A stretch of 64,000 bases of DNA, taken from positions 186,001 through 250,000 of the IMG/VR virus record IMGVR_UViG_3300027816_000051, one strand, 5' to 3'. Below are positions 25,545 through 49,304 of this stretch, piece after piece. Under the pieces are notes generated by a model. That model worked only from the letters and a program-made list of their open reading frames with translations. It was not told the origin of the DNA and made no database searches. Made by a program: the position numbers and the translations under genes. Positions within the stretch are counted from its first letter, which is position 1; each line of letters begins with the position of its first letter.

Positions 25545-25633
25545 AATATATTGATTTTGATATATAAAATATACACAAGAAAATCCTAAAAACCAAATCC
25601 TATAAAAAAATCTTTCAAAGAACTAATGCCAAA

Positions 25634-25954
25634 CTAAATCCACAGTATGATTCCCTCCTCAGGGTTATCAGGGTACCGTGACTCTTCTAAACATACACCA
25701 CATGTGGATGGTAATAATTGCTGCTTACCTTTTATTCCATCTACCTGAAATTGCGATAGAGGTGCTGGTATACTGAATCCACATATGTGACACTCTAACC
25801 TATATACGTTTAACTCACCCTTCCAATATAAATCAGTCAAGTTGAATTTCTTTCCCATCACTACGTTGTCATTAACGTCGGTAATGGTGTCTTCTATTAT
25901 TTCACCTGTGGTAGGGTCCGTGAAGTATACCTTGTCCCTGATGAAGAGTTTCAT
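25634..25954 (-). CDS. Hypothetical zinc-ribbon protein
   Basis: CHICG and CGVC; TAG stop lies inside a GCCAAACTAAAT motif. Confidence 0.6.
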   Translation of the reverse strand: MKLFIRDKVYFTDPTTGEIIEDTITDVNDNVVMGKKFNLTDLYWKGELNVYRLECHICGFSIPAPLSQFQVDGIKGKQQLLPSTCGVCLEESRYPDNPEEGIILWI

Positions 25955-26123
25955 TTACTCTTCCCCCTTTCTTCCAAACGTTGCAAATATTGTGAAAACA
26001 TCTTGGCCGCCATTGCTAACCTTTGAGGTTTAAAACAATATTTCTTATTAAGTCTAGCCATTGCTATCCTCATGAACTGTTCCTGAATCCGTGGTTCTAC
26101 TACTATCATGACTTTAAATATTG

Positions 26124-26585
26124 CTACAGGTGAGTATTGAATACATCAAAATCCCTAATTCCCATATTTTGTCTCTCCACTCTTGCGTTGTGCTGTAAAA
26201 ACGCTTGAATACCTTCACCGTGTGGTACGGCTTGAAATATTAGTTGCTGTTTAAATTGCTCTGAAGTAATAACTCGAACAACAGACAGTCCAAGTAATCT
26301 CATCCAAAATGGTTCGTCGACCATTACAGATTTAATCCTGAAATAGTTCACAGATTCTCGAGTCACACTGAAGACCCCTTTTCGTTCAATTACACAGTCA
26401 TCATAGAATTCATACCTCCAACAATCTACTTCGAAATATTTGTAGATATAGATGACTACCGCCAATGCACATGCATATGGGTGTACGAAGTAAGTTGCTG
26501 GTACCATGGCCAGCCAACCAATATTCAACCACTGAGATGGGGTGAATATGTGAATCGGTTCTTGAGGTTTCTGTGTATTGAACAT
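26124..26585 (-). CDS. Membrane protein with bacterial PH (bPH_2) domain
   Basis: Two TMs, then YEFYDDCVIERKGVFS..RIKSV..PFWMRLLGL. Confidence 0.75.
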   Translation of the reverse strand: MFNTQKPQEPIHIFTPSQWLNIGWLAMVPATYFVHPYACALAVVIYIYKYFEVDCWRYEFYDDCVIERKGVFSVTRESVNYFRIKSVMVDEPFWMRLLGLSVVRVITSEQFKQQLIFQAVPHGEGIQAFLQHNARVERQNMGIRDFDVFNTHL

Positions 26586-26589
26586 AATA

Positions 26590-26880
26590 CTAAGTTTTTG
26601 TTACAGTTTTATTTGCGGTTGTTCCTGCTGGTGAACATCCACATGGTGATGCTTTTCTACACATATTCATAAATGTCAGTGTATCCACTAAGTATACCTT
26701 CATGGTATCACCATATGAACCTTTATCCCATTGGGGTTTAATTACTTCTCGGGTTATGTTGCAATCGATAAAGTAAACTTTGTGTCCACTTACTAATGCC
26801 TTGTCCCCGTGTTGGATATATGTTCGATTGGTTCCACAACCAACTAATCCAAGTGCTGATATAAATAATATTTTTTTCAT
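26590..26880 (-). CDS. Putative lipoprotein
   Basis: MKKILFISALGLVG-C lipobox-like. Confidence 0.55.
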   Translation of the reverse strand: MKKILFISALGLVGCGTNRTYIQHGDKALVSGHKVYFIDCNITREVIKPQWDKGSYGDTMKVYLVDTLTFMNMCRKASPCGCSPAGTTANKTVTKT

Positions 26881-26904
26881 AACTCCAAATCTAAATAAAA
26901 TTTA

Positions 26905-27507
26905 TTACTTCTCAATATGGATATCACGAAAAAATTCAAAATCAATTACTTCGTCTTCCTCCACCGCGAAGTCAACACACATTGCAATAATCTTTCCTCT
27001 TTTCTTTGCAACATATAATGTGTAAGAACCATCACCAAAACCAGATGAAGAAACTACTCCCTCGTCATACACACCGTATCGACTATCACCCAAGGTACGA
27101 GAACACATACTGATGTACCATTTTTCACCTTGTTCTTCCTCACGGGCCTCGGTCATTTCTTTCCAAGGTGTTACACCAAAGAATGAAATGTCACCATCTC
27201 CCAAACCGATTCGTTCTGTAATAGAGTCGTCACGGTAAGATTCTTTGGAGAAGATTCCACACTGACCTGAGTCGACACCGATGGTTGCAGGATAATCTTT
27301 CCAAACCAGTTTGTCGTCTTTATGGTCCTCGTGTATGACAAGTATCATTGAACTTCGGATACCCCAATCACCACAGTCGTGACGCTTAACATAGGTGTCA
27401 TACATACCGGGTTTAACACCACTAACAATTCCCTGACACCAGGTTGGGATTGTGTAACAAGGGTCGGATACTACGACCTCAGTTCCTAATTTGATTTTGT
27501 TTGTCAT
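26905..27507 (-). CDS. DUF4241-like protein
   Basis: VVSDPCY, IGVDSGQ, SSSGFGDGSY. Confidence 0.65.
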   Translation of the reverse strand: MTNKIKLGTEVVVSDPCYTIPTWCQGIVSGVKPGMYDTYVKRHDCGDWGIRSSMILVIHEDHKDDKLVWKDYPATIGVDSGQCGIFSKESYRDDSITERIGLGDGDISFFGVTPWKEMTEAREEEQGEKWYISMCSRTLGDSRYGVYDEGVVSSSGFGDGSYTLYVAKKRGKIIAMCVDFAVEEDEVIDFEFFRDIHIEK

Positions 27508-27598
27508 ACACCTATTGATTTTTAATGTTCTATATTCAAAATTAATACATTTACTAGAATATTCCAAATTTTTCTAGAATATTTTTGCCAATCTAAAT

Positions 27599-27898
27599 TC
27601 AGTACATCTCCTCCTTCAGTTGCTTTGCTTTCTCAAAGTGTTTCTTGATTTGGTTTGCAAAACTCACCAAACGAGCTTTGGTCTTTGCGTATGCGTAGAA
27701 CTGACAATACTCACTGTCAAAATCGATTCCACTACAATTGATGTTTCTCTTGACACAGTCCTCGAAGTCATAGGCAGAGTCGTAGTCGTGACCAATTGCT
27801 TCTTTTTTAGGGAAACCAGTAAGTGTCCACTGTGCTCCATCCCAATCACCTTTGTAAATTGAGAGTCCAATACCTGTTGAAATTGTTTCTGTTTTCAT
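27599..27898 (-). CDS. Hypothetical protein
   Basis: Operon member; stop abuts the motif at 27587. Confidence 0.55.
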   Translation of the reverse strand: MKTETISTGIGLSIYKGDWDGAQWTLTGFPKKEAIGHDYDSAYDFEDCVKRNINCSGIDFDSEYCQFYAYAKTKARLVSFANQIKKHFEKAKQLKEEMY

Positions 27899-27902
27899 AC
27901 CT

Positions 27903-28382
27903 CTACTTTTTAAATGTTGATTTGAATACTCGGATGTTTTCCTCAATCTCGAGGTCCATAGCCTGAGCTAACTTCATCTTGGCTTTGGTCATGAACTCCT
28001 TGTCGCCAGACAAAATCTCCAAATCCTCCTCAGGGTGAAACTCAATCTTGTCGACAATAACACGGACATCTTTTGACTTCTTATCCTTACGGTAGAAAGG
28101 AGTCCTTGCGTAGATGTACTCACGAACTTGAGTCAACTTGATATCACTGAGGTCCTCACGAATTCTCATTTGGATTATAATCTCCTCGAGTGATGCTAGT
28201 TTTTCGAATGTTAATTTACTCTCAGTGATTAAGTTCTTATATAAACCAGTGAGCTCTTTAAGCTCCTTAGAATATTTCTTACCATCACCGTGGTTGATGA
28301 ATTGGTCATATGAACTCAGTTCACTCTTTGACCCTACGATGTCAATGAAGACACCCTCGATTGTTTTATTTACTCGTCCCAT
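27903..28382 (-). CDS. Hypothetical protein
   Basis: 159-aa ORF in an operon. Confidence 0.6.
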   Translation of the reverse strand: MGRVNKTIEGVFIDIVGSKSELSSYDQFINHGDGKKYSKELKELTGLYKNLITESKLTFEKLASLEEIIIQMRIREDLSDIKLTQVREYIYARTPFYRKDKKSKDVRVIVDKIEFHPEEDLEILSGDKEFMTKAKMKLAQAMDLEIEENIRVFKSTFKK

Positions 28383-28654
28383 AATCTTTAAAAGAAGTTT
28401 AATACAGATTTTAACATGCCAAACAAAATTCGGGGTTCGGCTGTCCCGTCGGAAAATTTTACTTCAGAGTTTTCCATTTCTCTTTTCATTTGAATTGCTT
28501 CATCAACTTTAATCCGTTGCTCGATGGTTCTTGCGTGGTATTTGGATGAAACAATGACATTCTCTTGAGTTCTCAATGCGTCTACCCATTCTTGGTAGGT
28601 TAATTCTTCTTGAGGTTCTGCTGTCGATAATATTTTCAAATCTTCCATATGAAT

Positions 28655-29269
28655 TTATTTTACTTTTTCCTTTAGTTCTTCTTCGTATATTCTACGGATT
28701 TCTTTTGCGTCTTCCGTATCCACATAAGGGAATTGTGCAACGAAGTCATCAACACTAGTTTCGTTATCGATTGCATATTCCATCTCATTTTGGAAAAGGG
28801 ATTCCCAAAAGTATTCTTCGTCAAAACGATAGTTACCTTCGAGATAACCATAATCATCCTCAACCACTCCGTTTTGATTAATGGTTGTTTTGCCACAGAA
28901 ATCACTTCCACCCTCCGAGTAGAACAACTCCACATCCACACCATACATCTTGTGTAATACAACACCAAAGTTTATTGGTGGTGACCACGCCGTATCAGGT
29001 GACATATAGATAACATCCTTCTCAAAAGTGAAGTTGCAGTCGGCGTATGACACATCCCATTTGGTACCATACCAACTGGTGTTTGCATTATACCATCCAC
29101 CTTGTTCGTATTCTTCTTTACTAATTTCAGGTTCACGACCGATTAAGGACTCAAACACGATACACTTTTCAGGTTCGGACTTTGGAACATCATTAAGGAT
29201 ACGAGTGAGCAAACCAATCTGCTCTTCAGTACCTGTTATTGTTATTGAGTTTTGACACCAGTTCGGCAT
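28655..29269 (-). CDS. DUF1281/YubB ferredoxin-like family protein
   Basis: MPNWCQN, WYGTKWD, DTAWSPP. Confidence 0.7.
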   Translation of the reverse strand: MPNWCQNSITITGTEEQIGLLTRILNDVPKSEPEKCIVFESLIGREPEISKEEYEQGGWYNANTSWYGTKWDVSYADCNFTFEKDVIYMSPDTAWSPPINFGVVLHKMYGVDVELFYSEGGSDFCGKTTINQNGVVEDDYGYLEGNYRFDEEYFWESLFQNEMEYAIDNETSVDDFVAQFPYVDTEDAKEIRRIYEEELKEKVK

Positions 29270-29352
29270 AATCTATCTATTTTAAGCTGTTCATTAATAC
29301 AAAGGTATAAAGAGGATACCATTTTACCAAACGATATCCTCTTTTTATTTTT

Positions 29353-29898
29353 TTACCAGGATGATTGGTAGTAGAAATCTCCTTCCTTTTCCTCTAATAA
29401 GGGAGTGATTTGTTTGATGGTATCTTCTAAACCTTTTAGATACCACTCATCATATTCAGTTCCCCCGAAAAAGAAACCTGCTTGGGTTGGTAGTAGTTCT
29501 TCCGCAAGTTCGGTGTCGGTGTAGACATCGATGTCCTCATACAATTCCTTACCACCTTGCCAACCAACTTTCACCTGAACCTTCTTCGTCGGAGAATTTT
29601 TCAGGGTTGCTCTAACTTTCCCACAGGTATCCACCAACTCTTTGAGTTTTTCGCGGTCTACATAATACTCACCACAATCGTCCTCACCGTCCTGTACATT
29701 GTTTACAAACCATGCGTGGATGTGGTTGTCCTTTCTCCAATACGCCACCTGTTCCTCGATGGATGAAATTCTGTCGGGTTGAATTTCCTTAACTACTTTC
29801 CCACCCTTCTTAACTGTCACCTTGTGAAGTTGTTCGGGTTCCATATGTGACCAATTTTTCACATAGGTTTTCTTCTTGAGATACATGTCTAATCCCAT
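29353..29898 (-). CDS. Conserved phage hypothetical protein (MGLDMY...YWRK family)
   Basis: MGLDMYL, YWRKDNHIHAWF, GFFFGG, YYQSSW. Confidence 0.7.
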   Translation of the reverse strand: MGLDMYLKKKTYVKNWSHMEPEQLHKVTVKKGGKVVKEIQPDRISSIEEQVAYWRKDNHIHAWFVNNVQDGEDDCGEYYVDREKLKELVDTCGKVRATLKNSPTKKVQVKVGWQGGKELYEDIDVYTDTELAEELLPTQAGFFFGGTEYDEWYLKGLEDTIKQITPLLEEKEGDFYYQSSW

Positions 29899-29902
29899 TG
29901 TA

Positions 29903-30205
29903 TTATTGATTTAAGATGTTAAACAATTTTGTACCAAGACCAAATAACTTTTCGGCCTTATCTTCTCTTTTTCCTTCACTACACACGTAGATTGACTTAT
30001 CAGGTAGAACACCCAAATCCAACATTCCAAATGTGTGTTCCCATTTACCATTGATGAATTGTTCACCTGTAAACCTTTCTTGTGCGTTGTACGCTTCGTA
30101 GGTCATTTTCAATTTGACATTATTCTCATTTTGAATAATTCTCATCTCATATGACTTATCTCTCAAGTGAGATGATACCGAGTGGATTACTTTTTCTTTT
30201 TTCAT
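29903..30205 (-). CDS. Hypothetical protein (probably leaderless)
   Basis: ATG lies 4 nt after TATCTTTG. Confidence 0.6.
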   Translation of the reverse strand: MKKEKVIHSVSSHLRDKSYEMRIIQNENNVKLKMTYEAYNAQERFTGEQFINGKWEHTFGMLDLGVLPDKSIYVCSEGKREDKAEKLFGLGTKLFNILNQ

Positions 30206-30265
30206 AATACAAAGATATAACAATTTTTCTTTTATACCAAATTTATTTTCAACTTTGTTGCCAAA

Positions 30266-30577
30266 CTAAATGTCCTCGACGGTAAAGTCATCCGACTCAA
30301 GGATGTCTATGATGTGTGCGAGTTCATATATGTCCAATTCAACTAACGAGAGTTCTATACTATCACCAAAACTTTCCGACATCACAGTACCATCAGGTAA
30401 TATTCCATACGCCGCGTATTGAACTCTACCATCATCTTCGTACATACCTTCGGTAACCCAAACTCCAAACACATTTCTAAATGTGATTTGTTGGTTCTCA
30501 CCAATAATGGTCGAACATTTGTTTTTAATTTTTTTGATTATTTCCTCTTGTAGGTCTTGAATTTTTTTCTTGTACAT
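30266..30577 (-). CDS. Hypothetical protein
   Basis: Own promoter; TAG stop inside the motif. Confidence 0.65.
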   Translation of the reverse strand: MYKKKIQDLQEEIIKKIKNKCSTIIGENQQITFRNVFGVWVTEGMYEDDGRVQYAAYGILPDGTVMSESFGDSIELSLVELDIYELAHIIDILESDDFTVEDI

Positions 30578-30699
30578 AATAAAATGTTTTAGTAATACAA
30601 AGATATAACAATTTTTCTTTTATACCAAATTTATTTTCAACTTTGTTGCCAACCTAAATCAATGTCCATCCCATAATATATGTGTACGAGGTTTTTAAT

Positions 30700-30725
30700 A
30701 AAAAACCCCACATTTCTGTGGGGTT
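30700..30725 (-). terminator. Intrinsic terminator (same hairpin reused near 34213, 40725, 41816)
   Basis: aaaaaaccccacatttctgtggggtt. Confidence 0.85.
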
Positions 30726-30740
30726 CTCTCCTTAAACCAA

Positions 30741-31331
30741 TCAATCATAAGTAATCCTCGCGTATTTTACTGTGACCCAGTTGTCCTTTACAACAATCTT
30801 ACCCATGTCCTCACCATCCTCGCCTTTCCAATAAACCTCACCATTTAATTTCACACCCCACTTCTCAAAGAAATGATTGATGATATATTTCAACCACTCA
30901 ACGTAGTTGTAAAACTTCTCACCACCATCCCATATTAGATGAGTTCCATTTTCATCCGTAGTCCACTGACACCATAAACCAGGTTGACATTTACCCTCTC
31001 GTGTTCTCAAATCATTTTGTGTCCACCTTTCGTTGTAGTTAGTTGTTAGAAAATCTAGTTGACCTGGAGGTGTATTGTAATCGACAATACTATCATCCTT
31101 GTCTTGACCTGCGAACCCATTACCACCAACAAAGTATTCACCATCGTTTCCGTAGGTTTCTTCTTTTGGTAGAAAAGGGTTTCCGTGTTCACCCTTAAAT
31201 AACTCATAGAGTTTCTCAACATTTCGTTTCATTCTACGAGTGTTGTTGAACTTGGTGATGTAATTCTTTTCATCACTAGTAAGTGGACGACTGAATTCAA
31301 ATCCACCTTCGAAATCGGTTGTGTATCCCAT
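30741..31331 (-). CDS. Conserved phage hypothetical protein (MGYTTDF family)
   Basis: QPGLWCQW, WDGGEKFYNYVEWL, WKGED. Confidence 0.7.
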   Translation of the reverse strand: MGYTTDFEGGFEFSRPLTSDEKNYITKFNNTRRMKRNVEKLYELFKGEHGNPFLPKEETYGNDGEYFVGGNGFAGQDKDDSIVDYNTPPGQLDFLTTNYNERWTQNDLRTREGKCQPGLWCQWTTDENGTHLIWDGGEKFYNYVEWLKYIINHFFEKWGVKLNGEVYWKGEDGEDMGKIVVKDNWVTVKYARITYD

Positions 31332-31410
31332 ACTTTTTTAATTTAATTGTATTACAAAGATATAACAATTTTTCTTTTATACCAAATTTTTTTTCAACTT
31401 TGTCGCCAAA

Positions 31411-31887
31411 CTAAATCCCCCCTGTGAATATGGGGTTTGGTCTGAACTCCAATTTGTACTTTGGGTTGTAACTACCACCCGAACAATTGCTACATGAATA
31501 AGACCTACTTCTTAAACGATGGGCTTTGGATACCTTACCACAACCAACACATGTTGCAATATATTTTGCTTCGGGTGTTTCAACTACTTTACTACTATAA
31601 CAACGATGTCCATCACAACCTATTTCAATCGCTTTCGACCTCCATACATGGTTATGTTTTTGACCAGGACAAAGTGCGTGTGCAATCTCATGTAGAATAG
31701 TATTCTTTACATGACTTTCATCATTAAGTAATGTCAATACTTTGGATAGTGTAATTTGTTTAGGTCTGTATTTACAACACCCAAACCTACTTTTTGCATT
31801 GTCATACGCAAATGTCCACCCCTTAACATCTAACTTGTGTTTGTGAATTAACTTCTCTGCTAACCGTTGTGCTTTAATTAAGTCCAT
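31411..31887 (-). CDS. SprT-like zinc metalloprotease
   Basis: FGCC, ILHEIAHAL, HNHVW, C-terminal CxxC pairs. Confidence 0.85.
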   Translation of the reverse strand: MDLIKAQRLAEKLIHKHKLDVKGWTFAYDNAKSRFGCCKYRPKQITLSKVLTLLNDESHVKNTILHEIAHALCPGQKHNHVWRSKAIEIGCDGHRCYSSKVVETPEAKYIATCVGCGKVSKAHRLRSRSYSCSNCSGGSYNPKYKLEFRPNPIFTGGI

Positions 31888-31908
31888 GTTGTTTTATTTT
31901 AGGCCAAA

Positions 31909-32298
31909 CTAAATTTCACCTTCACCTGTCGTGATGTACACTCCGTAATCGATGGTGTGCAATTGTGGTACTCCATCATTGTCCATGATGTGACCATCGA
32001 ATAACCAGTTGGGTTGAACTCGTGGATTGTATCGAACCCTACGACTTTCATCCTTGTATGGTTGACCTGTGTAAATCTTGATGTCCTTACAAAGTATCCA
32101 CGCACATACTGTTTTATTACCACCATCGAAAATCTTCTGTGCTGTTTTCCTGTGGTTCTTAAATGTGCAACCTGTCATGACCAACTGATTATCTGTTGGA
32201 CTGTAATACAATACACTACCATCAGGGTGTTGTACTTTCCACTTCATGTAGTTCTTACCTCTACCGAGATTGAACCTTACTTTAATACTTTTACTCAT
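31909..32298 (-). CDS. Hypothetical protein
   Basis: Own promoter; KTVCAW, YNP; TAG stop inside the motif. Confidence 0.65.
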   Translation of the reverse strand: MSKSIKVRFNLGRGKNYMKWKVQHPDGSVLYYSPTDNQLVMTGCTFKNHRKTAQKIFDGGNKTVCAWILCKDIKIYTGQPYKDESRRVRYNPRVQPNWLFDGHIMDNDGVPQLHTIDYGVYITTGEGEI

Positions 32299-32316
32299 CT
32301 TGATTGGTTTATAATA

Positions 32317-32348
32317 CAAATATAATACTAATTCTTTTATATTCCAAA
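32317..32348 (-). promoter_or_regulatory. Bacteroidota promoter, representative of about 28 similar ones between 27.5 and 49.6 kb
   Basis: TTTG-N20-TATATTTG on the - strand; similar elements near 30210, 30598, 31355, 33016, 34062, 37123, 40360, 42755, 44112, 46549, 46856. Confidence 0.88.
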
Positions 32349-32392
32349 TGTTTTTTTGCCAAACAAAAATCCCCCTGTGACGGGGGACCTTT

Positions 32393-38667: not shown

Positions 38668-38687
38668 TTCTTTTACTTTTTAATTGT

Positions 38688-39735: not shown

Positions 39736-39737
39736 AG

Positions 39738-41631: not shown

Positions 41632-42035
41632 ATGGATGTTTTTTAATTTGATACAAATGTAATACACTTTTCATTATAATCCAAATAAATCTTTATTTTT
41701 TTTTTCTGACCCCAGAATTCACCGTACCATCTCAGAAATTGGTTGGCATCTGTCATACACCCGCCAAACTAAATTGAACACGGGATTTGCCGGCGACGAA
41801 TTTTTTTAGCAAACAAAAAACCCCCACATTTCTGTGAGGGTTCCTTAACCAAATAAAACTAATCTATGAACGACAAATCAAGTGTATTACACTTTAACCA
41901 AATATAGGAATTAAAACAAACATTGTCAATAGGAAAAACATAAGTATTACAATGCCACCCAAAATTCCATCCCAAAATTCCTTTCGGTCTTCTTGGTAAA
42001 CTTCTTTGAAAGTTGAAAACATTTCCTTTAACATA

Positions 42036-42395: not shown

Positions 42396-42488
42396 TTTTT
42401 GTTTTTTTAATTATTGGACAAATATACAAATGAATTTTTGGAATATACAAACGATTGTGCCAATCAAAATCGGCGGTTCACCATCTCC

Positions 42489-42734
42489 TCAGATATTTCC
42501 CGAAAAGACAAGAAAATTGTTGGGTGGTAAATAAGTGTCGGGAGTGTCAATGATTTCATATTCATCTTCACCCTCAACTACACCAAGAGTCCTACCACTA
42601 TCCCAACGGACATTGATAACACCATGACCAACATGATAAATTGTTCCCATTGAACCTTCCTCAACGGGGTTAGGGTCGTTCTCCATTGAAACGAGACGAA
42701 TTCTTTTTCCGATTAATTTTTCGTTTATTTTCAT
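42489..42734 (-). CDS. DUF4314 family protein
   Basis: RIRLVSMENDPNPVEEGSMGTI..VRWDSGRTLG. Confidence 0.75.
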   Translation of the reverse strand: MKINEKLIGKRIRLVSMENDPNPVEEGSMGTIYHVGHGVINVRWDSGRTLGVVEGEDEYEIIDTPDTYLPPNNFLVFSGNI

Positions 42735-42809
42735 ATCTGTATTAGTTTATTAATACAAATATACAACTTATTTTATGATATCCAAATTTTTTTTAGGATA
42801 TTTTGCCAA

Positions 42810-43115
42810 TCAAATTGATGTCAATCTGAATATTCGTTTGAACTCTTTTTCAATTCTTCTGAATCTTATTTCGTCTTTTTCTCTAACATAACGCGATATT
42901 GTTTTGTTAAATTGAAAGTTAGAACGAGTAAGAAGATAGATAAATTTTCTCCTCTCCACTTTGTGACCTTCAAAGTTGTATGCCCATTCAACATCAACCG
43001 AAATATAATTTTCAGTTTCAATGATGTCACACACTTTACCTTCTTTTTCCGATTTTTTTAGGTAGTTCATTACTTCCTCATCGGTATTCAATGATATGTC
43101 GTTATAGTTTTTCAT
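42810..43115 (-). CDS. Hypothetical protein (probably leaderless)
   Basis: ATG 4 nt after TATATTTG; TGA stop inside the motif at 42805. Confidence 0.6.
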   Translation of the reverse strand: MKNYNDISLNTDEEVMNYLKKSEKEGKVCDIIETENYISVDVEWAYNFEGHKVERRKFIYLLTRSNFQFNKTISRYVREKDEIRFRRIEKEFKRIFRLTSI

Positions 43116-43350
43116 AATACAAATATACAATTCATTTTATGATATCCAAATTTATTTTAAAATATCCAATAACACCATCTACTGTTTCACCCGGCGTCGT
43201 AAAAATTTTGGTTGGCTGACCACATAAAACACTTAAATATAATAGGTTATCCGCCAAACAAAATCCCCACCAGGCGTGGGCTGGGCGAATTCTGGTATAA
43301 AAAAAAATCCCCGACTTTCGCCGAGGACTTTTCACCTAACCAAACAAAAT

Positions 43351-43758
43351 CTATTCGTATTCTTCTGCGTACAATTCACCCGTGAGGTACATGTCGTAAG
43401 TTTTTACTTCACCCTCCAACACTTCGGTTACTTTGTCAATAAGACTTTGGGTAATTTTCTTTACTCCATATTCTTCACGGACTTTCTTCTTTGAAACAAA
43501 GTACCAACCAACTTGTCCACTATCCCAACGACAACTGAACGGACTTGTGTTCATTGTAATTCCCGAGTGGTCGTACAAGTAAAGAGGTAAGATAACACAA
43601 ACATCTTCTTCTTTGATGATTGCGTTTTTCATTTCTTCCCAACCATTGTAGTTATTGTGGTTGTAGTCGTGTTTGTCTCCAAGGTCGTAACGTCCGTGAA
43701 AACACACCATTTTTCCGAGGTTGTCCCAACTCCGTGGGTTGTCAAAATCTTGATACAT
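43351..43758 (-). CDS. Conserved phage hypothetical protein
   Basis: PRSWDNLG, LPLYLYDHSGIT, WDSGQVG, YLTGE. Confidence 0.7.
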   Translation of the reverse strand: MYQDFDNPRSWDNLGKMVCFHGRYDLGDKHDYNHNNYNGWEEMKNAIIKEEDVCVILPLYLYDHSGITMNTSPFSCRWDSGQVGWYFVSKKKVREEYGVKKITQSLIDKVTEVLEGEVKTYDMYLTGELYAEEYE

Positions 43759-44367
43759 AGTCGTTATTATTTATTGGTTTATACAAATATATAACAATTT
43801 TATTCGTTTACCAAATCTTTTTTGCCAAACTTTATTCGTCTGTACGCCTTCGCCGAAGGTTTCGACTTCTGTAACATTTTCCTACGGACTATTTGTGCGA
43901 CGTGTCTCACACTTAATCCATTAAGGGTTTCATTCTTCATAGTTAAATTCGGTTTCATCTTCTATTTCTTTAAGTTTTTGTTCAAACTCATTTCTCATTT
44001 CATCGGTATCAAAGATTGGTTGTTTAGTTTCATCATCAATGTAATAGTAAACACCGACTTTGATTTCCGTTGGGATTGATTTCTTACTCATAGTAATTAT
44101 GTATTACGATACAAATATAAAACTATATTCAGTATAATCCAAATTTTTTTTCATACCTGTCGTCTCCATCCCACAAATTGTTTGGCGTGTTGTTTAATGT
44201 TTTGACCGAAAGATTAAACAAAACATATAGTGTAATACGCCTTTATTGAGTGTCATACAGTGCCAACCAAATTTAGGATACAGCACGTGCTGTGAGGTGA
44301 AACTAAAACGCAACAAAAAAGGGTAACATTTCTGCTACCCTTTTCCACCGCAACCGAGTTAAACCAA

Positions 44368-44916
44368 TTAAATCGACAAGTACAGGCGGTTGTGGTTGTA
44401 TAGTGCGACTGGGTTTTCTTCCGCAATCTTACCATATTCCTTTTTAATGATTTCGTACATTCTATCTTGTGGTTCGTTAATACACTCCGATAAAAGTTCA
44501 CAAAAACCATAGTTACTTTCATCAACTACTTCTTGTTCGGTACCAGGTAAACCACAATAGTACGCTTCCCCTACTTCGGAAATAAACATTCCCGAATAAA
44601 AACCTTTCAACTTAAAGTGATTAACGAATTTGTCCGCGTTACACCAAATAAAAATTGAATTGTCTTTTTCTTTTAATAGGTACACCATACTTTCATCAAT
44701 GATGAAACCATTTGAACCAGGAAATTGTCCAACCGAGAACAATCCCATAGGTGCTCCGTGTCCACACATTATTACTCTGTCGTGGGCGTCGATAAGTTTT
44801 CTAACTTCTTCTTTTGTTACCCCACCCGTGATAATTGTCTTATTCGGTATAGGTTCGTACACAATATCTAAAAATTGTGTCGATTTGTCTTTTGGATGAA
44901 TTACAAGTGTTTTCAT
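44368..44916 (-). CDS. Hypothetical protein with possible His-Cys peptidase dyad
   Basis: VIMCGHG and IFIWCNA. Confidence 0.5.
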   Translation of the reverse strand: MKTLVIHPKDKSTQFLDIVYEPIPNKTIITGGVTKEEVRKLIDAHDRVIMCGHGAPMGLFSVGQFPGSNGFIIDESMVYLLKEKDNSIFIWCNADKFVNHFKLKGFYSGMFISEVGEAYYCGLPGTEQEVVDESNYGFCELLSECINEPQDRMYEIIKKEYGKIAEENPVALYNHNRLYLSI

Positions 44917-45552
44917 TATTTTGTCGATTTTATGATACAAAGATATAACGAGTTTTTTATTCTACCAAATTTATTTTTATTTTTCTTGCCAACTAACCAA
45001 ATAGTAACTTACCATTCGGTAACATCTCAGAACCGCTGCGTCGGGAAAATTTTGGTTGGCGTTCTTACAATCTGTAAAGTAAAAACCTACTAATCTGTAA
45101 AGTGGATGCCAAACAATTTTCACCCTGAACCGTGACTCAGGACTTCAGGTCATAAAAAAACCCCAACTTTCGTTGAGGTCTTGTCTTTACTCTTCTTCAC
45201 TATCCCGAAAAATTTGAATCGCTTCGTTGAACAATTCATTCTGTAATTGAAATAGTGTATATCCACTCTTAATACATTCATCTACCCAATCATTATCACC
45301 TTCAAAAATTCCTTCCCAACTTCTATTCGGTGGTAAACCCATTTCGTTTTCGGTTTGAATATGTTGGTAAATTAAACCAACAACTTCTTGTCTTGTCATT
45401 TTAATTAGTTTTGGTGAAACACAAAGATAAAACATTTTTTCGTATAATCCAAATTTTTTTATATCTTTCTTGCCAACCAATTTTCACCCTGAACCGTGAC
45501 TCAAGTTCTTCAGGTCATAAAAAAACCCCCACCTTTCGGTGAGGGTTCGTTG

Positions 45553-45855
45553 TTAAAAAACTTCGGGTTCAAACTCAATTTGTGGGATACCCAATAGTTC
45601 GTAATCATCAAATTCCCCCCAATCGGGTTCATTGAAATAACGAAAACGGACATCCATAGTTCCATCTTCGTTCCACCAAATACGGACTTGGGTTCGGTGG
45701 TCGGAAATAAAAAACCCTTCAAGTTGTTCCAACTTCTCAATTAGAGGTTGAACATCCGAATCGTCAATAGTTACTTCTTCGTTATTAACGAGGAAATCAT
45801 CAACACATTCACAATTACCATCGTAGTCGATAGAGAAATCAATGTACTTTTCCAT
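45553..45855 (-). CDS. Acidic hypothetical protein
   Basis: Cassette with promoter and terminator. Confidence 0.6.
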   Translation of the reverse strand: MEKYIDFSIDYDGNCECVDDFLVNNEEVTIDDSDVQPLIEKLEQLEGFFISDHRTQVRIWWNEDGTMDVRFRYFNEPDWGEFDDYELLGIPQIEFEPEVF

Positions 45856-46144
45856 TTTGTTTTTTTTGTTTTATTGGTTTAACAATACAAATATAAATCA
45901 AATTTTAATATACACAACATTTGAGTATATTTTTTTTTATCTATTTTGCCAAACTACCACGAAACAGATGACCACCTGTCGTCAAATCCGAAAAATTGTT
46001 TGGCGTAGGTGTAATACAATGTATGATAGTGTCATACAACGCCAACCAAAATTCCGAGCTGCAACTGTGCAGCTCCACTGCACACATCCGAGCAAAAAAA
46101 ATCCCCGACTTTCGCCGAGGACTTTCCACCTAACTAAACCAAAC

Positions 46145-46519
46145 CTAATATGAACCAAACCTTTCTTTTAACGCCACGTCAAACGCGGACATAAATGTTA
46201 CTTGTTCTTTGACTTCTTCAAGTGAAAGTTTGGTATCACCATTTTCACCCGTTTCATCATCGTAACCCATTATCAACCCATTACCCGATAGAGGTTGTCG
46301 GTAATTTTTCAACTTGAAAAACTTTGTGTTTTCATCAACACTCATTATACCTTCTTCATCAACATACACATCGTTTTCGTTGTTGTAACTAACAATCTCA
46401 AAAATAGAACACTTTAAGTGTCCATAGATACTTGGTAACTGACTACCAGTTTCATCACGAACAACTTCAACTTCGGAAATTGTTTTGTTTTCTACGTCGA
46501 TTAAAATTCCTCTTGACAT
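46145..46519 (-). CDS. DUF3846-like protein
   Basis: DVYVDEEG, PLSGNGLIMG. Confidence 0.6.
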   Translation of the reverse strand: MSRGILIDVENKTISEVEVVRDETGSQLPSIYGHLKCSIFEIVSYNNENDVYVDEEGIMSVDENTKFFKLKNYRQPLSGNGLIMGYDDETGENGDTKLSLEEVKEQVTFMSAFDVALKERFGSY

Positions 46520-46614
46520 TTCTTTTTTGTTTTATTGGTTTAACGATACAAATATAATACTATTTCTTTTATATTCCAAATCTTTTTTTGCCAATCAAAT
46601 TCCAACATCTCCCG

Positions 46615-47980
46615 TCAGGAGGTCAGGTATTTCTTGTCTTTGACAAATTTGAGGTGTCTACATTCCTCAATAGTCAATCCCACAAATTCGTTGGGAGTGA
46701 AACTGATTTCATCGGGATAGTAGTCGAACAAAAATTCTTCTTGTCCATTTTCCATTGTAACCCACACTTGGGGCATCGGGTCGAACAAACTCTTTGGTTG
46801 TTCCGTAATACGAGATGAGATAACTTTCATGATTTTGTCTATTGGTTTAACTATACAAATATAAAACTATTTTTCTTATATACCAAATTTATTTTTATTT
46901 TTCTCAGAACCGTCGTCCGTATCCAAAAATTGGTTGGCGTAGGTGTAATACGATACTCACTATTTGTCATACGGCGCCAAACAATTTTCCTTCAGGGCCC
47001 TGACTCAAGTCCTGAAATGTTCACCTTATCAATAAGGGAAACAAATAAAAAACCCCCACCATTACTGATGAGGGTTAGTCTGAACCAACAAACTAAATTC
47101 AATTTAAACAAAGATTTTTCATAAGGTCGGAAACTTGGTAAGGTTTATAAAAATCAAAAACCTCTTGATGTTTTTCATCGGTTACAAAATTGTGGAACTC
47201 AACATTCAAAACGCCCTTGTCAAAGGTTGTTTCAACACTACACAAAATTTCGTGTCCATCCCTTTCAATGATTTGTGGAACAACTCGGTCGTACACCATT
47301 CTACCGATTGGGTCGTTTGGTACTGGTCCACCACCAACACCATACTCGGTTTCCCCTTCTTCGTTTACTTTTTTCAAAAGGTACATTTTTACATTGGGTA
47401 CACTATCGTTTGTTCCCAACATTTCTTCGGTACTCACTTTTGCGGAGTGTGTCATTCCTTGAATAAAATCTCTGATTTCTTCAATGTCTTTGTAATTGTT
47501 CATACTTGTTCTTTTTATTTGGTTTAACAATACGAATATAATATGATTAAACGGATATTCCAAATAAATTTATATTTTTTTTGCCAACTTACGATACAAG
47601 ATGTCGAGGGACAGAAGACGGATTTTGATTTTTGGTTGGCGAGCGTAATACGATAATACCAATGTGTAATACCCCGCCAAACAATTTTCTACGCTGCTCA
47701 AATCCACCACAGAACCTCGTGTAAATAAAAAACCCCCAACTTTCGTTGAGGGTTAATTACCATTTTGGAATTTTTAGAACCTTTGAGGTTGTGGTTTCTT
47801 TTTACTCTTGATGTAATTTTTGATGTCCTCAAACAAAATGATAAAGAACATACCAATACCCATACAAGAAAATAAGAACATACCCATTTGATTGTCTACG
47901 GGAATATCCCAAGTTAATGATACCCACATTGAGTAAACAATGAACCCGATGATTGCGATGTAAGGAAATAACTTTTTCAT
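46615..47980 (-). other. Three single-gene cassettes (46615-46830, 47099-47503, 47774-47980; the last is a two-TM protein)
   Basis: Each has its own -33/-7 promoter. Confidence 0.6.
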
Positions 47981-48078
47981 AATTGTTTCTTTTGTTTGGT
48001 TTAACGATACAAATATAATATAAGTTTCAATATAAACAACATTTTTTTATATCTATTTTGCCAACTTGATAACACCAA

Positions 48079-48276
48079 CAACTTCTCCTTCGAGCAACAG
48101 CGCATGGTTGGAAATTAGATTGGCGGTTTTAGCAACACCTAAAGCATTTAGCAACTTCTCCTTCGAGCAATTGCGCATGAGGGAAATTAGATTGGCGGTT
48201 TTAGCAACACCTAAAGCATTTAGCAACTTCTCCTTCGAGCAATTGCGCATGAGGGAAATTAGATTGGCGGTTTTAG
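48079..48276. repeat. 72-bp tandem repeat, about 2.7 copies
   Basis: Unit caacttctccttcgagcaattgcgcatgagggaaattagattggcggttttagcaacacctaaagcatttag starts at 48079 (variant), 48152 and 48224. Confidence 0.95.
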
Positions 48277-48479
48277 TCCGTGTCGGCGCATTTGCAACAA
48301 ACTCGCCAAACAATATCTAACAGCGCAGCCCGGGTGAAATTCTGTTCCCAAATTTTTTCTTACTTTTTTTATTCGTTCCCGCCAAACAACATTCCCGATG
48401 GTTCACGGGGTTCGGAAAATTTCACACACAAAAAAAGGGGATACTTTCGTACCCCCTTCGGTTTTTCTTTCGGTGTGTG

Positions 48480-49043
48480 TTACTCCTTTACAATTTCGTA
48501 CCTATCTCCGTTTACCGAAATTTCAAGTACATTGTCAAGGTCGGGTGTTATCGGTTTAACCTCTCTATCCAAACCTTGTTTTTCGTTACTACTCTTTCTA
48601 TCACTTATCCACTTTTCAAACAATGTTTTGTCTATTGAGTTACCACGAAATTCGTACTCCGTTGTTCCTTTGATTTCGGGAAACCACTCTACCATAAGGT
48701 AGGTTTTTGTTTCGGTGTCGGTGTCAGTCAGTAATGATTTACTGATATGTTTTTTACCCGTTGGACTTTCAACCTTAAAGGTGTTCGGGTCTTTACCCTC
48801 TTTCATAAGGTTGTTGTGTACCCTCTTTTCGTAGTCAGTTACCAAACGATAAGTTTTAGATGATACCTTAAAGATTTCCTTATAGTAAGGGTTTAATTCT
48901 TTGGTGTCCTTTGTCTTTTGTAAAACTTCTTTGTAAAGGGTTTTCATTTTTACCCCTACAAAAGTGTTAGGACTTTTTTCCTCAATCTCTTTGATGATAC
49001 TGATGATTTCGGACTTCGTTACTTTTTTGATTTCTTTGTTCAT
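48480..49043 (-). CDS. Hypothetical protein
   Basis: Cassette with promoter and terminator; NPY, DYEKRV motifs. Confidence 0.65.
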   Translation of the reverse strand: MNKEIKKVTKSEIISIIKEIEEKSPNTFVGVKMKTLYKEVLQKTKDTKELNPYYKEIFKVSSKTYRLVTDYEKRVHNNLMKEGKDPNTFKVESPTGKKHISKSLLTDTDTETKTYLMVEWFPEIKGTTEYEFRGNSIDKTLFEKWISDRKSSNEKQGLDREVKPITPDLDNVLEISVNGDRYEIVKE

Positions 49044-49304
49044 ACTTTTATTTTTTAGTTTGTTAGGAATACACAAATATAAAACACTATTTCATATAAA
49101 CAAAACTTTTTTTTATTTATTTCGCCAGACTACCACGAACCCGATGACCACCTGTCGTCCGTATCCGAAAATTGGTTGGCGAGTCGGTGCAATTATGGTC
49201 TATTCGCCAATCAAATTTCCACCTGAACCATCTCCTCAAGTTCACACAAATCTTCTTGGACAAAAAAAATCCCCACCTTTCGGTGAGGACTTTCGGTGTG
49301 GTGT

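What the first reader, a model, noticed from the sequence alone, without database searches (positions are those of the whole stretch)
25593..49135. Motif is helically phased upstream of host-type promoters (7-9, 18-19 or 29-30 bp from the -33 box)
Seen: the gap between the -33 box and the motif is exactly 18 bp at 27587, 30260, 30648, 31405, 37173, 37724, 40410, 42805, 44988, 45472 and 47583, and 19 bp at 48060 and 49124. It is 7-9 bp at 32358, 36335, 42459, 43824 and 46590, and 29-30 bp at 25628, 33077 and 45948. Spacer sequences differ but lengths step by about 10.5 bp. Established: class I activators need same-face positioning relative to RNA polymerase. Inference: a factor bound here contacts Bacteroidota RNAP, controlling about 20 promoters together. 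The same promoter type outside this block (4149, 16630, 59777) lacks the motif, giving two promoter classes.
Basis: partly seen in the sequence, partly recalled or inferred. Interest (0 to 1): 0.85.

Follow-up and report, generated by a model that had tools for sequence, protein, structure and literature searches.

The report
Boundary repeat of phage gene cassettes
The short motif seen one, two or three DNA turns upstream of about 20 promoters is real. It is the tail of a longer 12-base repeat that marks the ends of small swappable gene cassettes in an uncultured giant phage of Bacteroidota, so the neat spacing alone does not show that an activator touches RNA polymerase.

Summary
Observation confirmed. 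At all 21 listed sites, TTGGC on the gene (minus) strand lies 7-9, 18-19 or 29-30 bp upstream of a Bacteroidota -33/-7 promoter (R=0.94 at 10.5 bp). The pattern holds for 91 distinct spacers from related phage contigs (7-9, 17-20, 28-31, 40 bp; nothing between).

The picture is incomplete, though.
- TTGGC is the 3' end of a 12-13-mer, R-A-W-T-T-W-G-N-TTGGC-R. It has 67 copies in 24.5-49.7 kb (69 in the window against 6.5 expected).
- Fifty copies lie on the gene strand. Seventeen are inverted partners.
- Only about a third sit next to a promoter. The rest overlap stop codons, follow terminators by 34-44 nt, or form inverted pairs and a tandem array.
- Nine in-block promoters lack the motif.
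- The step of about 11 bp comes from phased A-tract modules, which motif-less promoters also carry.
- Cassette gains, losses and shuffles between relatives break at the repeat.
- Sister clades carry a different repeat (ACTGGG, ACTGGA, TCTGGC) in the same architecture.

Best reading (confidence 0.4): a lineage-specific, operator- or stoperator-like protein site at the joints of PeSL-like early-gene cassettes. No binding protein was found. A class-I activator role remains possible but unproven.

The parts
24185..49700 (-). Block of about 46 small minus-strand genes in about 30 promoter-terminator cassettes. It holds 67 of the window's 69-70 motif copies.
   Evidence: Pfam families found: DUF932, SprT-like, GP88, DUF1281_C, DUF6915, DUF3846, DUF4314 and L5_gp82-like.
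25566..25639 (-). Motif copy (TAG in the motif is the stop of the upstream ORF), 30-bp spacer and promoter with a TATATTTT -7 box.
27537..27598 (-). Motif copy, 18-bp A-rich spacer and -33/-7 promoter.
30210..30271 (-). Motif copy (TAG is the stop of ORF 30266-30577), 18-bp spacer and promoter. It is the right-hand repeat flanking a window-only cassette.
30598..30659 (-). Motif copy, 18-bp spacer and promoter. It is the left-hand repeat of the same cassette.
31355..31416 (-). Motif copy (TAG is the stop of the SprT-like ORF), 18-bp spacer and promoter.
32317..32369 (-). Terminator hairpin whose T-run runs into the motif, then a 9-bp spacer and promoter.
33016..33088 (-). Motif copy, 29-bp spacer and promoter. 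The ortholog in L039 has an 11-bp shorter spacer.
36296..36346 (-). Motif copy (contains TGA), 8-bp spacer and promoter.
37123..37184 (-). Motif copy, 18-bp spacer and promoter. It bounds a window-only cassette.
37674..37735 (-). Motif copy, 18-19-bp spacer and promoter. It bounds a window-only cassette.
40360..40421 (-). Motif copy, 18-bp spacer and promoter. The L039 ortholog has a 10-bp longer spacer.
40087..40098 (-). Motif copy directly after a hairpin, 18-19 bp upstream of a promoter with a degenerate -33 box. It bounds a window-only cassette.
42419..42470 (-). Motif copy (TGA in the motif is in frame with the upstream ORF), 7-bp spacer and promoter.
42756..42816 (-). Motif copy (TGA is the stop of ORF 42810-43115), 18-bp spacer and promoter.
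43784..43835 (-). TTGGC with a weak 5' half, 8-bp spacer and promoter.
44938..44999 (-). TTGGC with a weak 5' half, 18-bp spacer and promoter.
45422..45483 (-). Motif copy, 18-bp spacer and promoter. It bounds a window-only cassette.
45888..45959 (-). TTGGC with a weak 5' half, 29-bp spacer and promoter.
46549..46601 (-). Motif copy (contains TGA), 9-bp spacer and promoter.
47533..47594 (-). TTGGC with a weak 5' half, 18-bp spacer and promoter.
48010..48071 (-). TTGGC with a weak 5' half, 19-bp spacer and promoter.
49074..49135 (-). CTGGC variant, 19-bp spacer and promoter.
25010..25181 (-). Tandem array of four motif copies (25010, 25066, 25113, 25170), spaced 47-57 nt. It lies upstream of gene 24185-25003, which has no -33/-7 promoter.
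28418..28429 (-). Motif copy in the last codons of ORF 28388-28648, between co-transcribed genes. No promoter follows.
31903..31914 (-). Motif copy whose TAG ends ORF 31909-32298. The SprT-like ORF, which has no promoter of its own, starts 15 nt later. Synteny with L041 breaks here.
33160..33220 (.). Inverted pair: gene-strand copy 33209-33220 and opposite-strand copy 33160-33171, with a 37-nt loop.
34142..34169 (.). Inverted pair with a 4-nt loop.
34793..34804 (-). Single copy 43 nt after a terminator T-run.
35837..35848 (-). Single copy after a terminator, next to an atypical promoter-like site.
37828..37887 (.). Inverted pair, 39 nt after a terminator T-run.
40623..40684 (.). Inverted pair downstream of the DUF932 gene's terminator.
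41736..41774 (.). Inverted pair with a 15-nt loop containing GTATGAC, upstream of the motif-less DUF932 promoter.
43205..43264 (.). Inverted pair after a terminator.
44175..44273 (.). Inverted pair with a 75-nt loop containing GTATGAC and GTATTAC.
45049..45119 (.). Inverted pair after a terminator.
45993..46052 (.). Inverted pair whose loop carries GTATGAC and GTATTAC.
46927..46987 (.). Inverted pair whose loop carries GTATGAC and GTATTAC, upstream of motif-less promoter 46863.
47629..47687 (.). Inverted pair whose loop carries GTATTAC twice.
48079..48392 (.). Two gene-strand copies (48381, 48305) followed by three opposite-strand copies (48257, 48185, 48113). The last three sit inside a 72-bp tandem repeat of 2.7 units.
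49169..49217 (.). Inverted pair, 44 nt after a terminator T-run.
49683..49694 (+). Opposite-strand copy at the upstream edge of the block, before motif-less promoter 49595.
24557..24739 (-). Two copies inside gene 24185-25003 (24557 is a CTGGC variant; the other is 24728). Both are in the frame ATT-TTG-NTN-GGC.
29300..29345 (-). Example of an in-block promoter without the motif. The others have -7 boxes at 49595, 46863, 44119, 43127, 41661, 35702, 34675 and 34069. They carry the same phased A-tracts.

Best explanation
SETTING. The window comes from an uncultured giant (at least 288 kb) phage whose promoters are of the Bacteroidota sigma-A type. Positions 24.5-49.7 kb form a hyperplastic block of small accessory genes. 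They are organised as cassettes: phased A-tract array, -33/-7 promoter, one or a few ORFs, then an intrinsic terminator.

WHAT THE MOTIF IS.
- It overlaps the stop codon of the upstream ORF, or follows its terminator by 34-44 nt.
- It is then followed either directly by the next promoter's A-tract array, or by an inverted copy of itself.

PROPOSED MECHANISM (inferred, not shown). The repeat is the recognition site of a phage-lineage-specific, sequence-specific DNA-binding protein that acts on the whole block. The closest functional analogues are the operator/stoperator sites of Cluster A mycobacteriophages.
- Bound at the joints, the protein would insulate cassettes from read-through.
- It could also modulate the adjacent promoter. 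Shut-off is more likely than activation, because the promoters are already near consensus.

ORIGIN OF THE SPACING. The steps of 8, 18, 29 and 40 bp arise because the site abuts an integral number (1-4) of roughly 11-bp phased A-tract modules. These modules belong to the promoter. This geometry places any bound protein on one face of the helix, but it does not by itself show a contact with RNA polymerase.

EVOLUTIONARY ROLE. Because the same short sequence flanks every cassette, it also serves as the joint at which cassettes are gained, lost and shuffled between related phages, as PeSLs do in T4-like phages.
For: SHOWN.
- The motif gives 69 hits against 6.5 expected, almost all inside the block.
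- 50 of 67 copies lie in the 26% of the block that is non-coding, and 6 more overlap stop codons (p=1.6e-22). The strand split is 50:17.
- The motif is conserved as a 12-nt island between unrelated flanks. The roughly 25 nt on its 5' side are GC-rich but not conserved in sequence.
- The arms of inverted pairs are independent instances of the degenerate motif. They mismatch at the N and W positions and the loops are 4-75 nt, so base pairing is not what is conserved.
- The order stop, terminator, 34-44 nt, motif is regular.
- Related contigs keep the architecture but carry a different repeat: TCTGGC, TGTGGC, TTTGGCT, ACTGGG or ACTGGA.
- A scan of bacterial genomes found only isolated, chance-like hits.
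- Five window-only cassettes relative to L039 are each flanked by the repeat unit. Cassette order differs in L041.
- 27 of 114 blastn homology ends lie within 5 nt of a copy, against 6.7 expected.
- Spacer quantisation is documented. The same A-tract phasing occurs in motif-less promoters.

FROM THE LITERATURE.
- Stoperators are asymmetric 13-mers with more than 20 copies. They are intergenic and their orientation is tied to transcription (PMC9283540).
- PeSLs are early-promoter plus stem-loop cassettes that mediate indels in hyperplastic regions (PMC2839356, PMC4122927).
Against: - No DNA-binding protein, recombinase or transposase was found among about 50 proteins of the window scanned against Pfam or PHROGs. 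The window covers less than a quarter of the genome.
- The GC-rich 5' flank and the fixed distance from terminators are not explained by a simple operator model.
- The inverted pairs can fold as hairpins (dG -9.5 to -21 kcal/mol), and several are followed by a T-run, so an RNA or ssDNA role is not excluded.
- With an intergenic-only null, the enrichment of breakpoints at the motif is weaker (21 observed against 11.4 expected; the maximum in 2000 simulations was 22).
- No expression or binding data exist.
Confidence: 0.4

Rival explanations
1. The motif is the binding site of a class-I-type transcription activator. It sits on the same helical face as RNA polymerase and switches on about 20 host-type promoters together, defining a second promoter class.
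For: - The spacing is quantised with a period of 10.5-11 bp in the window and in relatives.
- Indels of 10 and 11 bp occur at orthologous promoters.
- The inferred site centres near -50.5, -60.5, -71.5 and -82.5 resemble class-I positions (my knowledge of CRP; -7 box coordinates from PMC6847099).
- The gap distribution is tighter for motif-bearing than for motif-less promoters.
- Clade C (L059) also places its own, different repeat at a fixed 11-12 bp from -33.
Against: - About two thirds of the copies have no promoter downstream, and 17 are inverted.
- The promoters have near-consensus -33 and -7 boxes, as good as those of the 9 motif-less in-block promoters.
- Motif-less promoters show the same A-tract phasing.
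- In clades B, E and F the repeat is not promoter-adjacent.
- No activator candidate was found.
Confidence: 0.15
2. No dedicated factor exists. The repeat is simply the conserved joint ('linker') of mobile promoter-terminator cassettes. It is kept similar by frequent homologous recombination and gene conversion among cassettes, and it persists because cassettes carrying it are the ones that get exchanged (a pure PeSL-type explanation).
For: - Cassette indels and reordering have breakpoints at the repeat unit.
- Promoter units 30260, 30648 and 31405 are near-identical copies.
- Each relative has its own dominant cassette type: 18 bp in the window, 29 bp in L041 and 19 bp in L043.
- PeSLs are a precedent (PMC2839356).
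Against: - Gene conversion should homogenise long tracts. At post-terminator copies, inverted pairs and the tandem array, only the 12-mer is conserved while both flanks differ.
- 12 nt is short for efficient homologous recombination.
- The strand bias and the inverted-pair arrangement are not predicted.
Confidence: 0.2
3. RNA-level element. On the transcript, the motif (AUUUUGUUUGGC) follows a GC-rich hairpin or pairs with its inverted copy. It would act as a back-up terminator, or as a 3'-end processing or stability signal recognised by a phage RNA-binding protein or nuclease.
For: - The strand bias is towards the transcribed strand.
- The position is 3' of ORFs.
- At 32358 and 40087 the motif's T-run is the T-run of a terminator hairpin, and about a third of copies have a hairpin just upstream.
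- Inverted pairs fold with z-scores down to -5, and several are followed by U-runs.
Against: - In 17-19 intergenic regions the motif lies 34-44 nt after a strong canonical terminator, so it would rarely be transcribed.
- Upstream hairpin propensity is weak overall (mean z -0.77).
- Stems carry systematic mismatches and show no compensatory pairing.
- Single copies have no partner.
- Rfam gave no match.
Confidence: 0.1
4. Site-specific recombination site. The repeat, or the hairpin formed by an inverted pair, is the target of a phage-encoded recombinase or HUH nuclease that inserts and excises cassettes. This would be integron attC-like or REPIN/RAYT-like.
For: - One repeat lies at the 3' end of nearly every cassette.
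- The SprT-like ORF (31411-31887), which has no promoter of its own, is bounded by two copies, and synteny with L041 breaks exactly there.
- Imperfect inverted repeats have variable centres and conserved mismatches.
- The repeat is clade-specific.
- The heptamer GTATKAC/GTMATAC is enriched in the loops in all clades.
Against: - No integrase, transposase or HUH protein was found in the window.
- Most cassettes carry their own promoter.
- attC core sites (RYYYAAC/GTTRRRY) are absent.
- Most indels are flanked by 50-72 bp of homology, which is enough for ordinary recombination.
- Only 13 of about 30 joints have an inverted partner.
Confidence: 0.1

Closest known systems
PeSLs (promoter-early stem-loop cassettes) of T4-like phages (Arbiol et al. 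2010, PMC2839356; Comeau et al. 2014, PMC4122927)
   Same: - Repeated composite units sit in a hyperplastic region: stop codon of the upstream gene, AT-rich region upstream of a strong host-type early promoter, and a terminator stem-loop.
- Each precedes a small ORF of unknown function.
- Indels and replacements between close relatives are bounded by the units.
   Different: - The promoter type is Bacteroidota -33/-7, not sigma-70.
- A separate 12-13-bp clade-specific motif is conserved apart from the promoter and the stem-loop. It also occurs without any promoter, as inverted pairs and as a tandem array.
- The AT-rich part is a quantised array of phased A-tracts.
- Mini-circles were not tested.
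Operator/stoperator sites of Cluster A mycobacteriophages (L5 gp71-type repressor; PMC9283540, PMC6550527)
   Same: - Both are asymmetric 12-13-bp sites present in tens of copies.
- They lie mostly in short intergenic spaces and at promoters, often at gene ends.
- Their orientation is correlated with the direction of transcription.
- The sequence variant differs between related phage lineages.
   Different: - No cognate repressor was identified here.
- There is no sign of a temperate lifestyle.
- The sites are confined to one 25-kb block.
- A quarter of the copies are inverted partners.
- Promoter-adjacent copies lie upstream of -33, not over the core promoter.
Class I activator sites (CRP-type at -61.5, -72.5, -82.5) and UP elements or phased A-tracts upstream of promoters
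   Same: The site is centred at integral helical turns upstream of the promoter, and A-tracts fill the -37 to -65 region where alpha-CTD or curved DNA acts.
   Different: - The promoters are near consensus.
- The phasing is also present without the motif.
- No activator is known.
- TSS positions are inferred, not mapped.
Integron attC sites and REP/REPIN elements
   Same: One imperfect inverted repeat with a variable centre lies at the 3' end of gene cassettes, the repeat sequence is lineage-specific, and cassette content varies between relatives.
   Different: There are no attC core sites and no integrase or RAYT gene in the window. Most cassettes have their own promoter, and many joints carry only a single repeat copy.

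Membership tests
Class I activator-dependent promoters | Activator site centred at integral helical turns upstream (about -61.5, -71.5, -82.5) | tested here: met
   Gaps of 8, 18, 29 and 40 bp put the 12-mer centre near -50.5, -60.5, -71.5 and -82.5, using -7 box = -12..-5 (PMC6847099). The TSS is inferred only.
Class I activator-dependent promoters | Weak core promoter that needs the activator | tested here: not met
   Motif-bearing promoters have TTTG and TAnnTTTG boxes as good as those of motif-less ones.
Class I activator-dependent promoters | A cognate activator protein, with expression dependent on it | not testable with these tools
   No DNA-binding domain was found in the scanned proteins. 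No expression data exist.
Stoperator-type multi-copy asymmetric operators | Asymmetric site of about 13 bp in tens of copies per genome | tested here: met
   67 copies of a 12-13-mer, with the information-content profile.
Stoperator-type multi-copy asymmetric operators | Intergenic location with orientation tied to transcription | tested here: met
   56 of 67 copies are intergenic or at stop codons, and 50 of 67 lie on the coding strand.
Stoperator-type multi-copy asymmetric operators | Cognate repressor encoded by the phage that binds the site | tested here: inconclusive
   None was found in the 64-kb window. The rest of the genome (at least 288 kb) could not be scanned.
PeSL-like regulatory cassettes | Host-type early promoter, AT-rich upstream region and terminator stem-loop, repeated in a hyperplastic region | tested here: met
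   About 30 promoters, canonical GC hairpin plus T-run terminators, and small ORFs with patchy distribution among relatives.
PeSL-like regulatory cassettes | Indels or replacements between close relatives bounded by the cassettes | tested here: met
   Five window-only cassettes relative to L039 have 50-72-bp overlapping flanks. Cassette order is shuffled in L041. Breakpoints are enriched at the motif.
PeSL-like regulatory cassettes | Excised mini-circles | not testable with these tools
   This needs read-level or PCR data.
Integron attC | Core sites RYYYAAC / GTTRRRY and an adjacent intI integrase | tested here: not met
   The arms are TTGNTTGGC / GCCAANCAA, and no integrase was found in the window.
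REP/REPIN with RAYT | Palindromic units dispersed over intergenic regions genome-wide, plus a RAYT gene | tested here: not met
   Copies are confined to one block of the window, with chance-level counts in the other 39 kb. No Y1 transposase was found.
Intrinsic terminator | GC-rich hairpin immediately followed by a U-tract | tested here: inconclusive
   This holds for some copies (32358, 40087) and for several inverted pairs. The overall upstream hairpin signal is weak (mean z -0.77), and most copies lie after a separate canonical terminator.

The most novel reading that the evidence does not exclude
The 12-mer is the target of a dedicated phage protein whose specificity has co-evolved with the site across sister clades (TTGGC, TCTGGC, TGTGGC, ACTGGG, ACTGGA). 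That protein both insulates or controls the early accessory-gene cassettes of a lytic giant phage and mobilises them. In effect this would be a phage-borne, integron-like or stoperator-like cassette system not described for Bacteroidota phages.
Probability: 0.15. Interest if true: 0.85.

Novelty: new variant of a known kind. Interest (0 to 1): 0.55.

Why it matters
- Regulation in Bacteroidota phages is almost unstudied, and their promoters differ from the E. coli paradigm.
- This block offers about 30 natural promoter variants in which the upstream region differs by whole helical turns (8, 18, 29, 40 bp). That is a ready-made series for testing how upstream A-tracts and upstream-bound factors act on sigma-A(Bfr) RNA polymerase.
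- A clade-specific 12-mer marks the joints of shuffled accessory-gene cassettes, many from families seen in anti-defence or plasmid leading regions. It gives a handle for finding the factor that controls or moves such genes in uncultured giant phages.
- The repeat also gives a simple sequence signature for locating these hyperplastic regions in metagenomes.

Tried and rejected
- **tRNA and Rfam scans of the window.** Nothing found.
- **Megablast of the block against GenBank phages.** No match. Only distant protein similarity was found: the helicase is 36% identical to that of Bacteroides phages DAC16-23.
- **Plus-strand ORFs covering the repeat-rich spacers** (for example 45842-46153 and 48964-49308). 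Their translations are low-complexity junk, so they were rejected as genes.
- **Stop-codon recoding or read-through**. TAG and TGA inside the motif act as ordinary stops of upstream ORFs. Stop usage is TAA 22, TGA 13, TAG 11, and nothing required read-through.
- **Sigma-54 or sigma-70 -35-like reading of TTGGCA.** No matching downstream element was seen by eye at the right spacing in the aligned promoter regions.
- **The motif's TTTGG as a phased decoy -33 box.** The offsets (14, 24, 35 bp) are not whole turns.
- **A general hairpin immediately upstream of every copy.** The signal is only weak.
- **Search for the binding protein.** Pfam and PHROGs scans of about 50 proteins and an Atlas search of the 272-aa protein behind the tandem array gave no DNA-binding lead. 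The only faint candidate is a weak ParB/GmrSD_N-like hit at 34900-35655.
- **Bacterial genome scan for inverted pairs.** Only single, chance-like hits.
- **Phasing of the inverted pairs relative to motif-less promoters.** Distances of 38-61 bp, counted by eye from the sequences, show no clear pattern.

Full report
**What the motif is**

The listed coordinates all carry GCCAA on the plus strand. That is TTGGC on the minus strand, the coding strand between about 24 and 50 kb. Downstream of each lies a textbook Bacteroidota promoter: TTTG, 19-20 nt, TAnnTTTG (consensus as in PMC6847099). An ATG-initiated ORF follows 15-35 nt later.

**Check of the observation**

No value falls between these classes.
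- The clustering is far from chance. Rayleigh R is 0.94 at 10.5 bp, and none of 20,000 uniform simulations with an optimised period reached it.
- After collapsing related cassettes to 8 clusters, R is 0.96 and p is about 1e-4.
- The promoters at 4149, 16630 and 59777 indeed lack the motif.

**The motif is longer and far more abundant than described**

- Aligning all minus-strand TTGGC sites gives the consensus R-A-W-T-T-W-G-N-TTGGC-R.
- AWTTWGNTTGGC with at most one mismatch occurs 69 times in the window, against 6.5 expected (maximum 14 in 100 shuffles). All but three hits lie in 24.5-49.7 kb.
- In the block there are 67 copies, 50 on the coding strand and 17 on the other.
- Fifty copies lie in the 26% of the block that is non-coding, 6 overlap the stop codon or last codons of an ORF, and 11 are deep inside genes (p=1.6e-22).
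- The TAG or TGA inside the motif is the actual stop codon of several upstream ORFs: 30260, 31405, 31903 and 25628 for TAG, and 42805 for TGA.
- Only 21-22 copies are promoter-adjacent.
- The rest fall into four groups:
  - four copies in tandem at 25010-25181;
  - single copies after terminators;
  - copies between co-transcribed genes (28418, 31903);
  - 13 gene-strand copies each followed 4-75 nt later by an inverted copy.
- Conversely, 9 of about 30 in-block promoters have no motif within 60 bp.

**Architecture of the intergenic regions**

- Long intergenic regions follow one plan. A stop codon is followed by a canonical GC hairpin with a T-run. A GC-rich stretch of 34-44 nt comes next (17 of 19 cases), then the motif, often an inverted copy, and finally the A-rich array and promoter.
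- The roughly 25 nt on the 5' side of every copy, on whichever strand it lies, are 50-60% GC in a 35% GC genome. They are not conserved in sequence.
- They form a clear hairpin in only about a third of cases.
- The arms of the inverted pairs are independent instances of the degenerate motif. The gene-strand arm is mostly TTGTTTGGC and the opposite-strand arm mostly TTGGTTGGC, which gives a constant mismatch. The W positions also often differ.
- The pairs can still fold (dG -9.5 to -21 kcal/mol).

**Where the window comes from**

- Proteins match phage families: a UvrD-like helicase of phrog_1967 and DUF932.
- The best, distant hits are to 170-180-kb Bacteroides phages and to Chryseobacterium and Flavobacterium phages.
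- The DUF932 protein retrieved 41 IMG/VR loci. Some are 100% identical and sit on contigs of up to 288 kb. More distant relatives sit on contigs of up to 324 kb.
- The window therefore comes from an uncultured giant phage. The Bacteroidota host is inferred from the promoter type.

**Evidence from relatives**

1. Close and moderately distant relatives (93-75% DUF932 identity) have the same repeat at the same density. They also show the same spacing rule. Ninety-one distinct spacers from 13 loci have lengths 7-9 (15), 17-20 (48), 28-31 (18) and 40 (1), with nothing between. The periodogram peaks at 10.5-11 bp.
2. Orthologous promoters change class between relatives. The promoter at 33077 has a 29-bp spacer here and 18-19 bp in L039 and L040, through a clean 11-bp indel. 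The promoter at 40410 is 10 bp longer in L039. Other examples are 47583 (18/29/19) and 46590 (9/9/18/29).
3. Sister clades keep the architecture but use a different repeat:
   - TTGTCTGGC (L060);
   - TTGTGTGGC (L062);
   - TGTTTGGCT (L061, L053);
   - TTTACTGGGG with inverted CCCCAGTAA (L045, L047 and related loci);
   - CTTTACTGGATTA (L059).
4. Promoter adjacency is not universal. L059 has its repeat 11-12 bp from -33 at 6-7 promoters. In clades B, E and F the position 7, 17-18 or 28 bp upstream of -33 is held by TTAACA, and their own repeat lies elsewhere.
5. Bacterial genomes hold only isolated, chance-like matches.

**What produces the 10.5-bp steps**

- The spacers are built from modules. 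An A-tract fills -1..-8 relative to the -33 box, with a dip at -9..-12. A second A-tract fills -13..-19, followed by another dip, and a third fills -24..-29.
- The same profile appears in the 38 motif-less promoters of the clade.
- Their AT-rich upstream region also tends to end near 10, 19, 30 and 39 bp, more loosely than with the motif.
- Promoters of clades whose repeat is not promoter-adjacent show similar steps, most clearly in L060 and L062.
- The periodicity is therefore a property of a phased A-tract array that belongs to the promoter. The motif abuts the array after 1, 2, 3 or rarely 4 modules.
- This puts whatever binds the motif on one face of the helix. With the -7 box at -12..-5, the centres fall near -50.5, -60.5, -71.5 and -82.5.
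- It does not by itself demonstrate a contact with RNA polymerase.
- The motif-bearing promoters are also as close to consensus as the motif-less ones, which is unlike typical activator-dependent promoters.

**Cassette dynamics**

- Relative to L039 (91-97% identity) the window has five extra single-gene cassettes: 30272-30586, 37178-37672, 40087-40358, 42810-43102 and 45179-45471.
- In each case the flanking alignments overlap by 50-72 bp on the motif-spacer-promoter unit.
- In L041 the cassettes are reordered. The homolog of 45187-45435 lies between the homologs of 36884-37102 and 37245-37652.
- The SprT-like ORF (31411-31887) has no promoter of its own. It is bounded by two motif copies, and synteny with L041 breaks exactly there.
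- Of 114 blastn alignment ends against L039-L043, 27 lie within 5 nt of a motif copy, against 6.7 expected (maximum 18 in 2000 simulations).
- With an intergenic-only null the figures are 21 of 64 against 11.4 (maximum 22).
- Gene content of the block is patchy among clades.
- This matches the behaviour of PeSLs in T4-like phages (PMC2839356, PMC4122927).

**Interpretation**

- A 12-nt island is conserved between unrelated flanks, is asymmetric and strand-biased, differs between sister lineages, and is absent from bacteria. This pattern points to recognition by a lineage-specific trans-acting factor. Passive homogenisation or selection for base pairing explains it less well.
- The closest functional analogue is the operator/stoperator system of Cluster A mycobacteriophages: asymmetric 13-mers, more than 20 copies, intergenic, with orientation tied to transcription (PMC9283540).
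- I therefore favour a protein-binding site at cassette joints (confidence 0.4). It would insulate cassettes and may modulate the adjacent promoters, and it doubles as the joint for cassette exchange.
- The main weaknesses are these:
  - no DNA-binding protein, recombinase or nuclease was found among about 50 scanned proteins;
  - the window covers under a quarter of the genome;
  - the GC-rich flank and the fixed distance from the terminator remain unexplained;
  - there are no expression data.

**Novelty**

I found no description of this phage group or of its repeat in the searched literature. The components resemble known kinds (PeSLs, stoperators, phased A-tracts). I rate it a new variant of a known kind, of moderate interest.

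Noticed in passing
window 48079-48276: A 72-bp unit is repeated 2.7 times in tandem at 96% identity. Each unit carries an opposite-strand copy of the motif (AATTAGATTGGC). The close relative L039 appears to have fewer units.
   Followed up: partly
loops of inverted pairs, e.g. window 46939-46975, 46005-46040, 47641-47675, 44187-44261; also L041, L042, L045, L047, L053, L056, L059-L062: The heptamer GTATKAC, or its complement GTMATAC, is enriched roughly 7-10-fold in the loops between inverted motif copies. This holds in every clade, even where the repeat itself differs. In the window it often appears as two direct copies about 20 bp apart. Its function is unknown. It recalls nick-site or promoter-like elements, but only from memory.
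   Followed up: partly
window 34048-34065, 45874-45891, 46535-46552, 46842-46859, 47519-47536, 47996-48013 (minus strand): The conserved leader TTTGTATYGTTAAACCAA starts inside the -7 box and runs into the 5' UTR of six cassettes (6 hits against 0.09 expected).
   Followed up: partly
window, about 19 sites in 25200-49300, e.g. 47730-47760, 47040-47060, 45520-45545, 41810-41835: The canonical terminators are themselves a sequence family: roughly CCCTCAC-GAAAGGT-GGGGG followed by T6-10, often followed by ATTGCTC. The 3' cassette ends are therefore repeated modules too.
   Followed up: partly
window 24185-25003 with 25010-25181: The last gene of the block (272 aa) has no family hit and a low-confidence Atlas model. 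It has no -33/-7 promoter, is preceded by four tandem motif copies, and contains two more copies in frame.
   Followed up: partly
window 24185-49700 (proteins): The block is rich in families typical of plasmid leading regions and phage accessory or anti-defence islands: DUF932, DUF3846, SprT-like, DUF1281_C (Api92-like), DUF6915, DUF4314, bPH_2, L5 gp82-like, and a weak ParB/GmrSD_N-like hit at 34900-35655.
   Followed up: partly
contig ranges of L033, L034, L037, L046, L052: Several IMG/VR contigs that are 100% identical to the window in the DUF932 protein begin or end inside this block. The assemblies probably break on the repeats. Alternatively, the block may lie near a genome end in some assemblies.
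   Followed up: no
L045 2188-2800 and 3363-3480; L059: In the sister clades the alternative repeats (TACTGGG, TACTGGA) also form tandem arrays spaced about 50-57 nt apart, and 'repeat, short loop, inverted repeat, about 48 nt, second inverted repeat' units. The higher-order arrangement is therefore conserved while the repeat sequence is not.
   Followed up: partly
clades B, E, F: L045, L056, L062 promoters: The hexamer TTAACA (often TTTTAACAA, preceded in L056 by CCTTCACAAA) sits 7, 17-18 or 28 bp upstream of the -33 box. These are the same quantised positions that TTGGCA occupies in the window's clade.
   Followed up: partly
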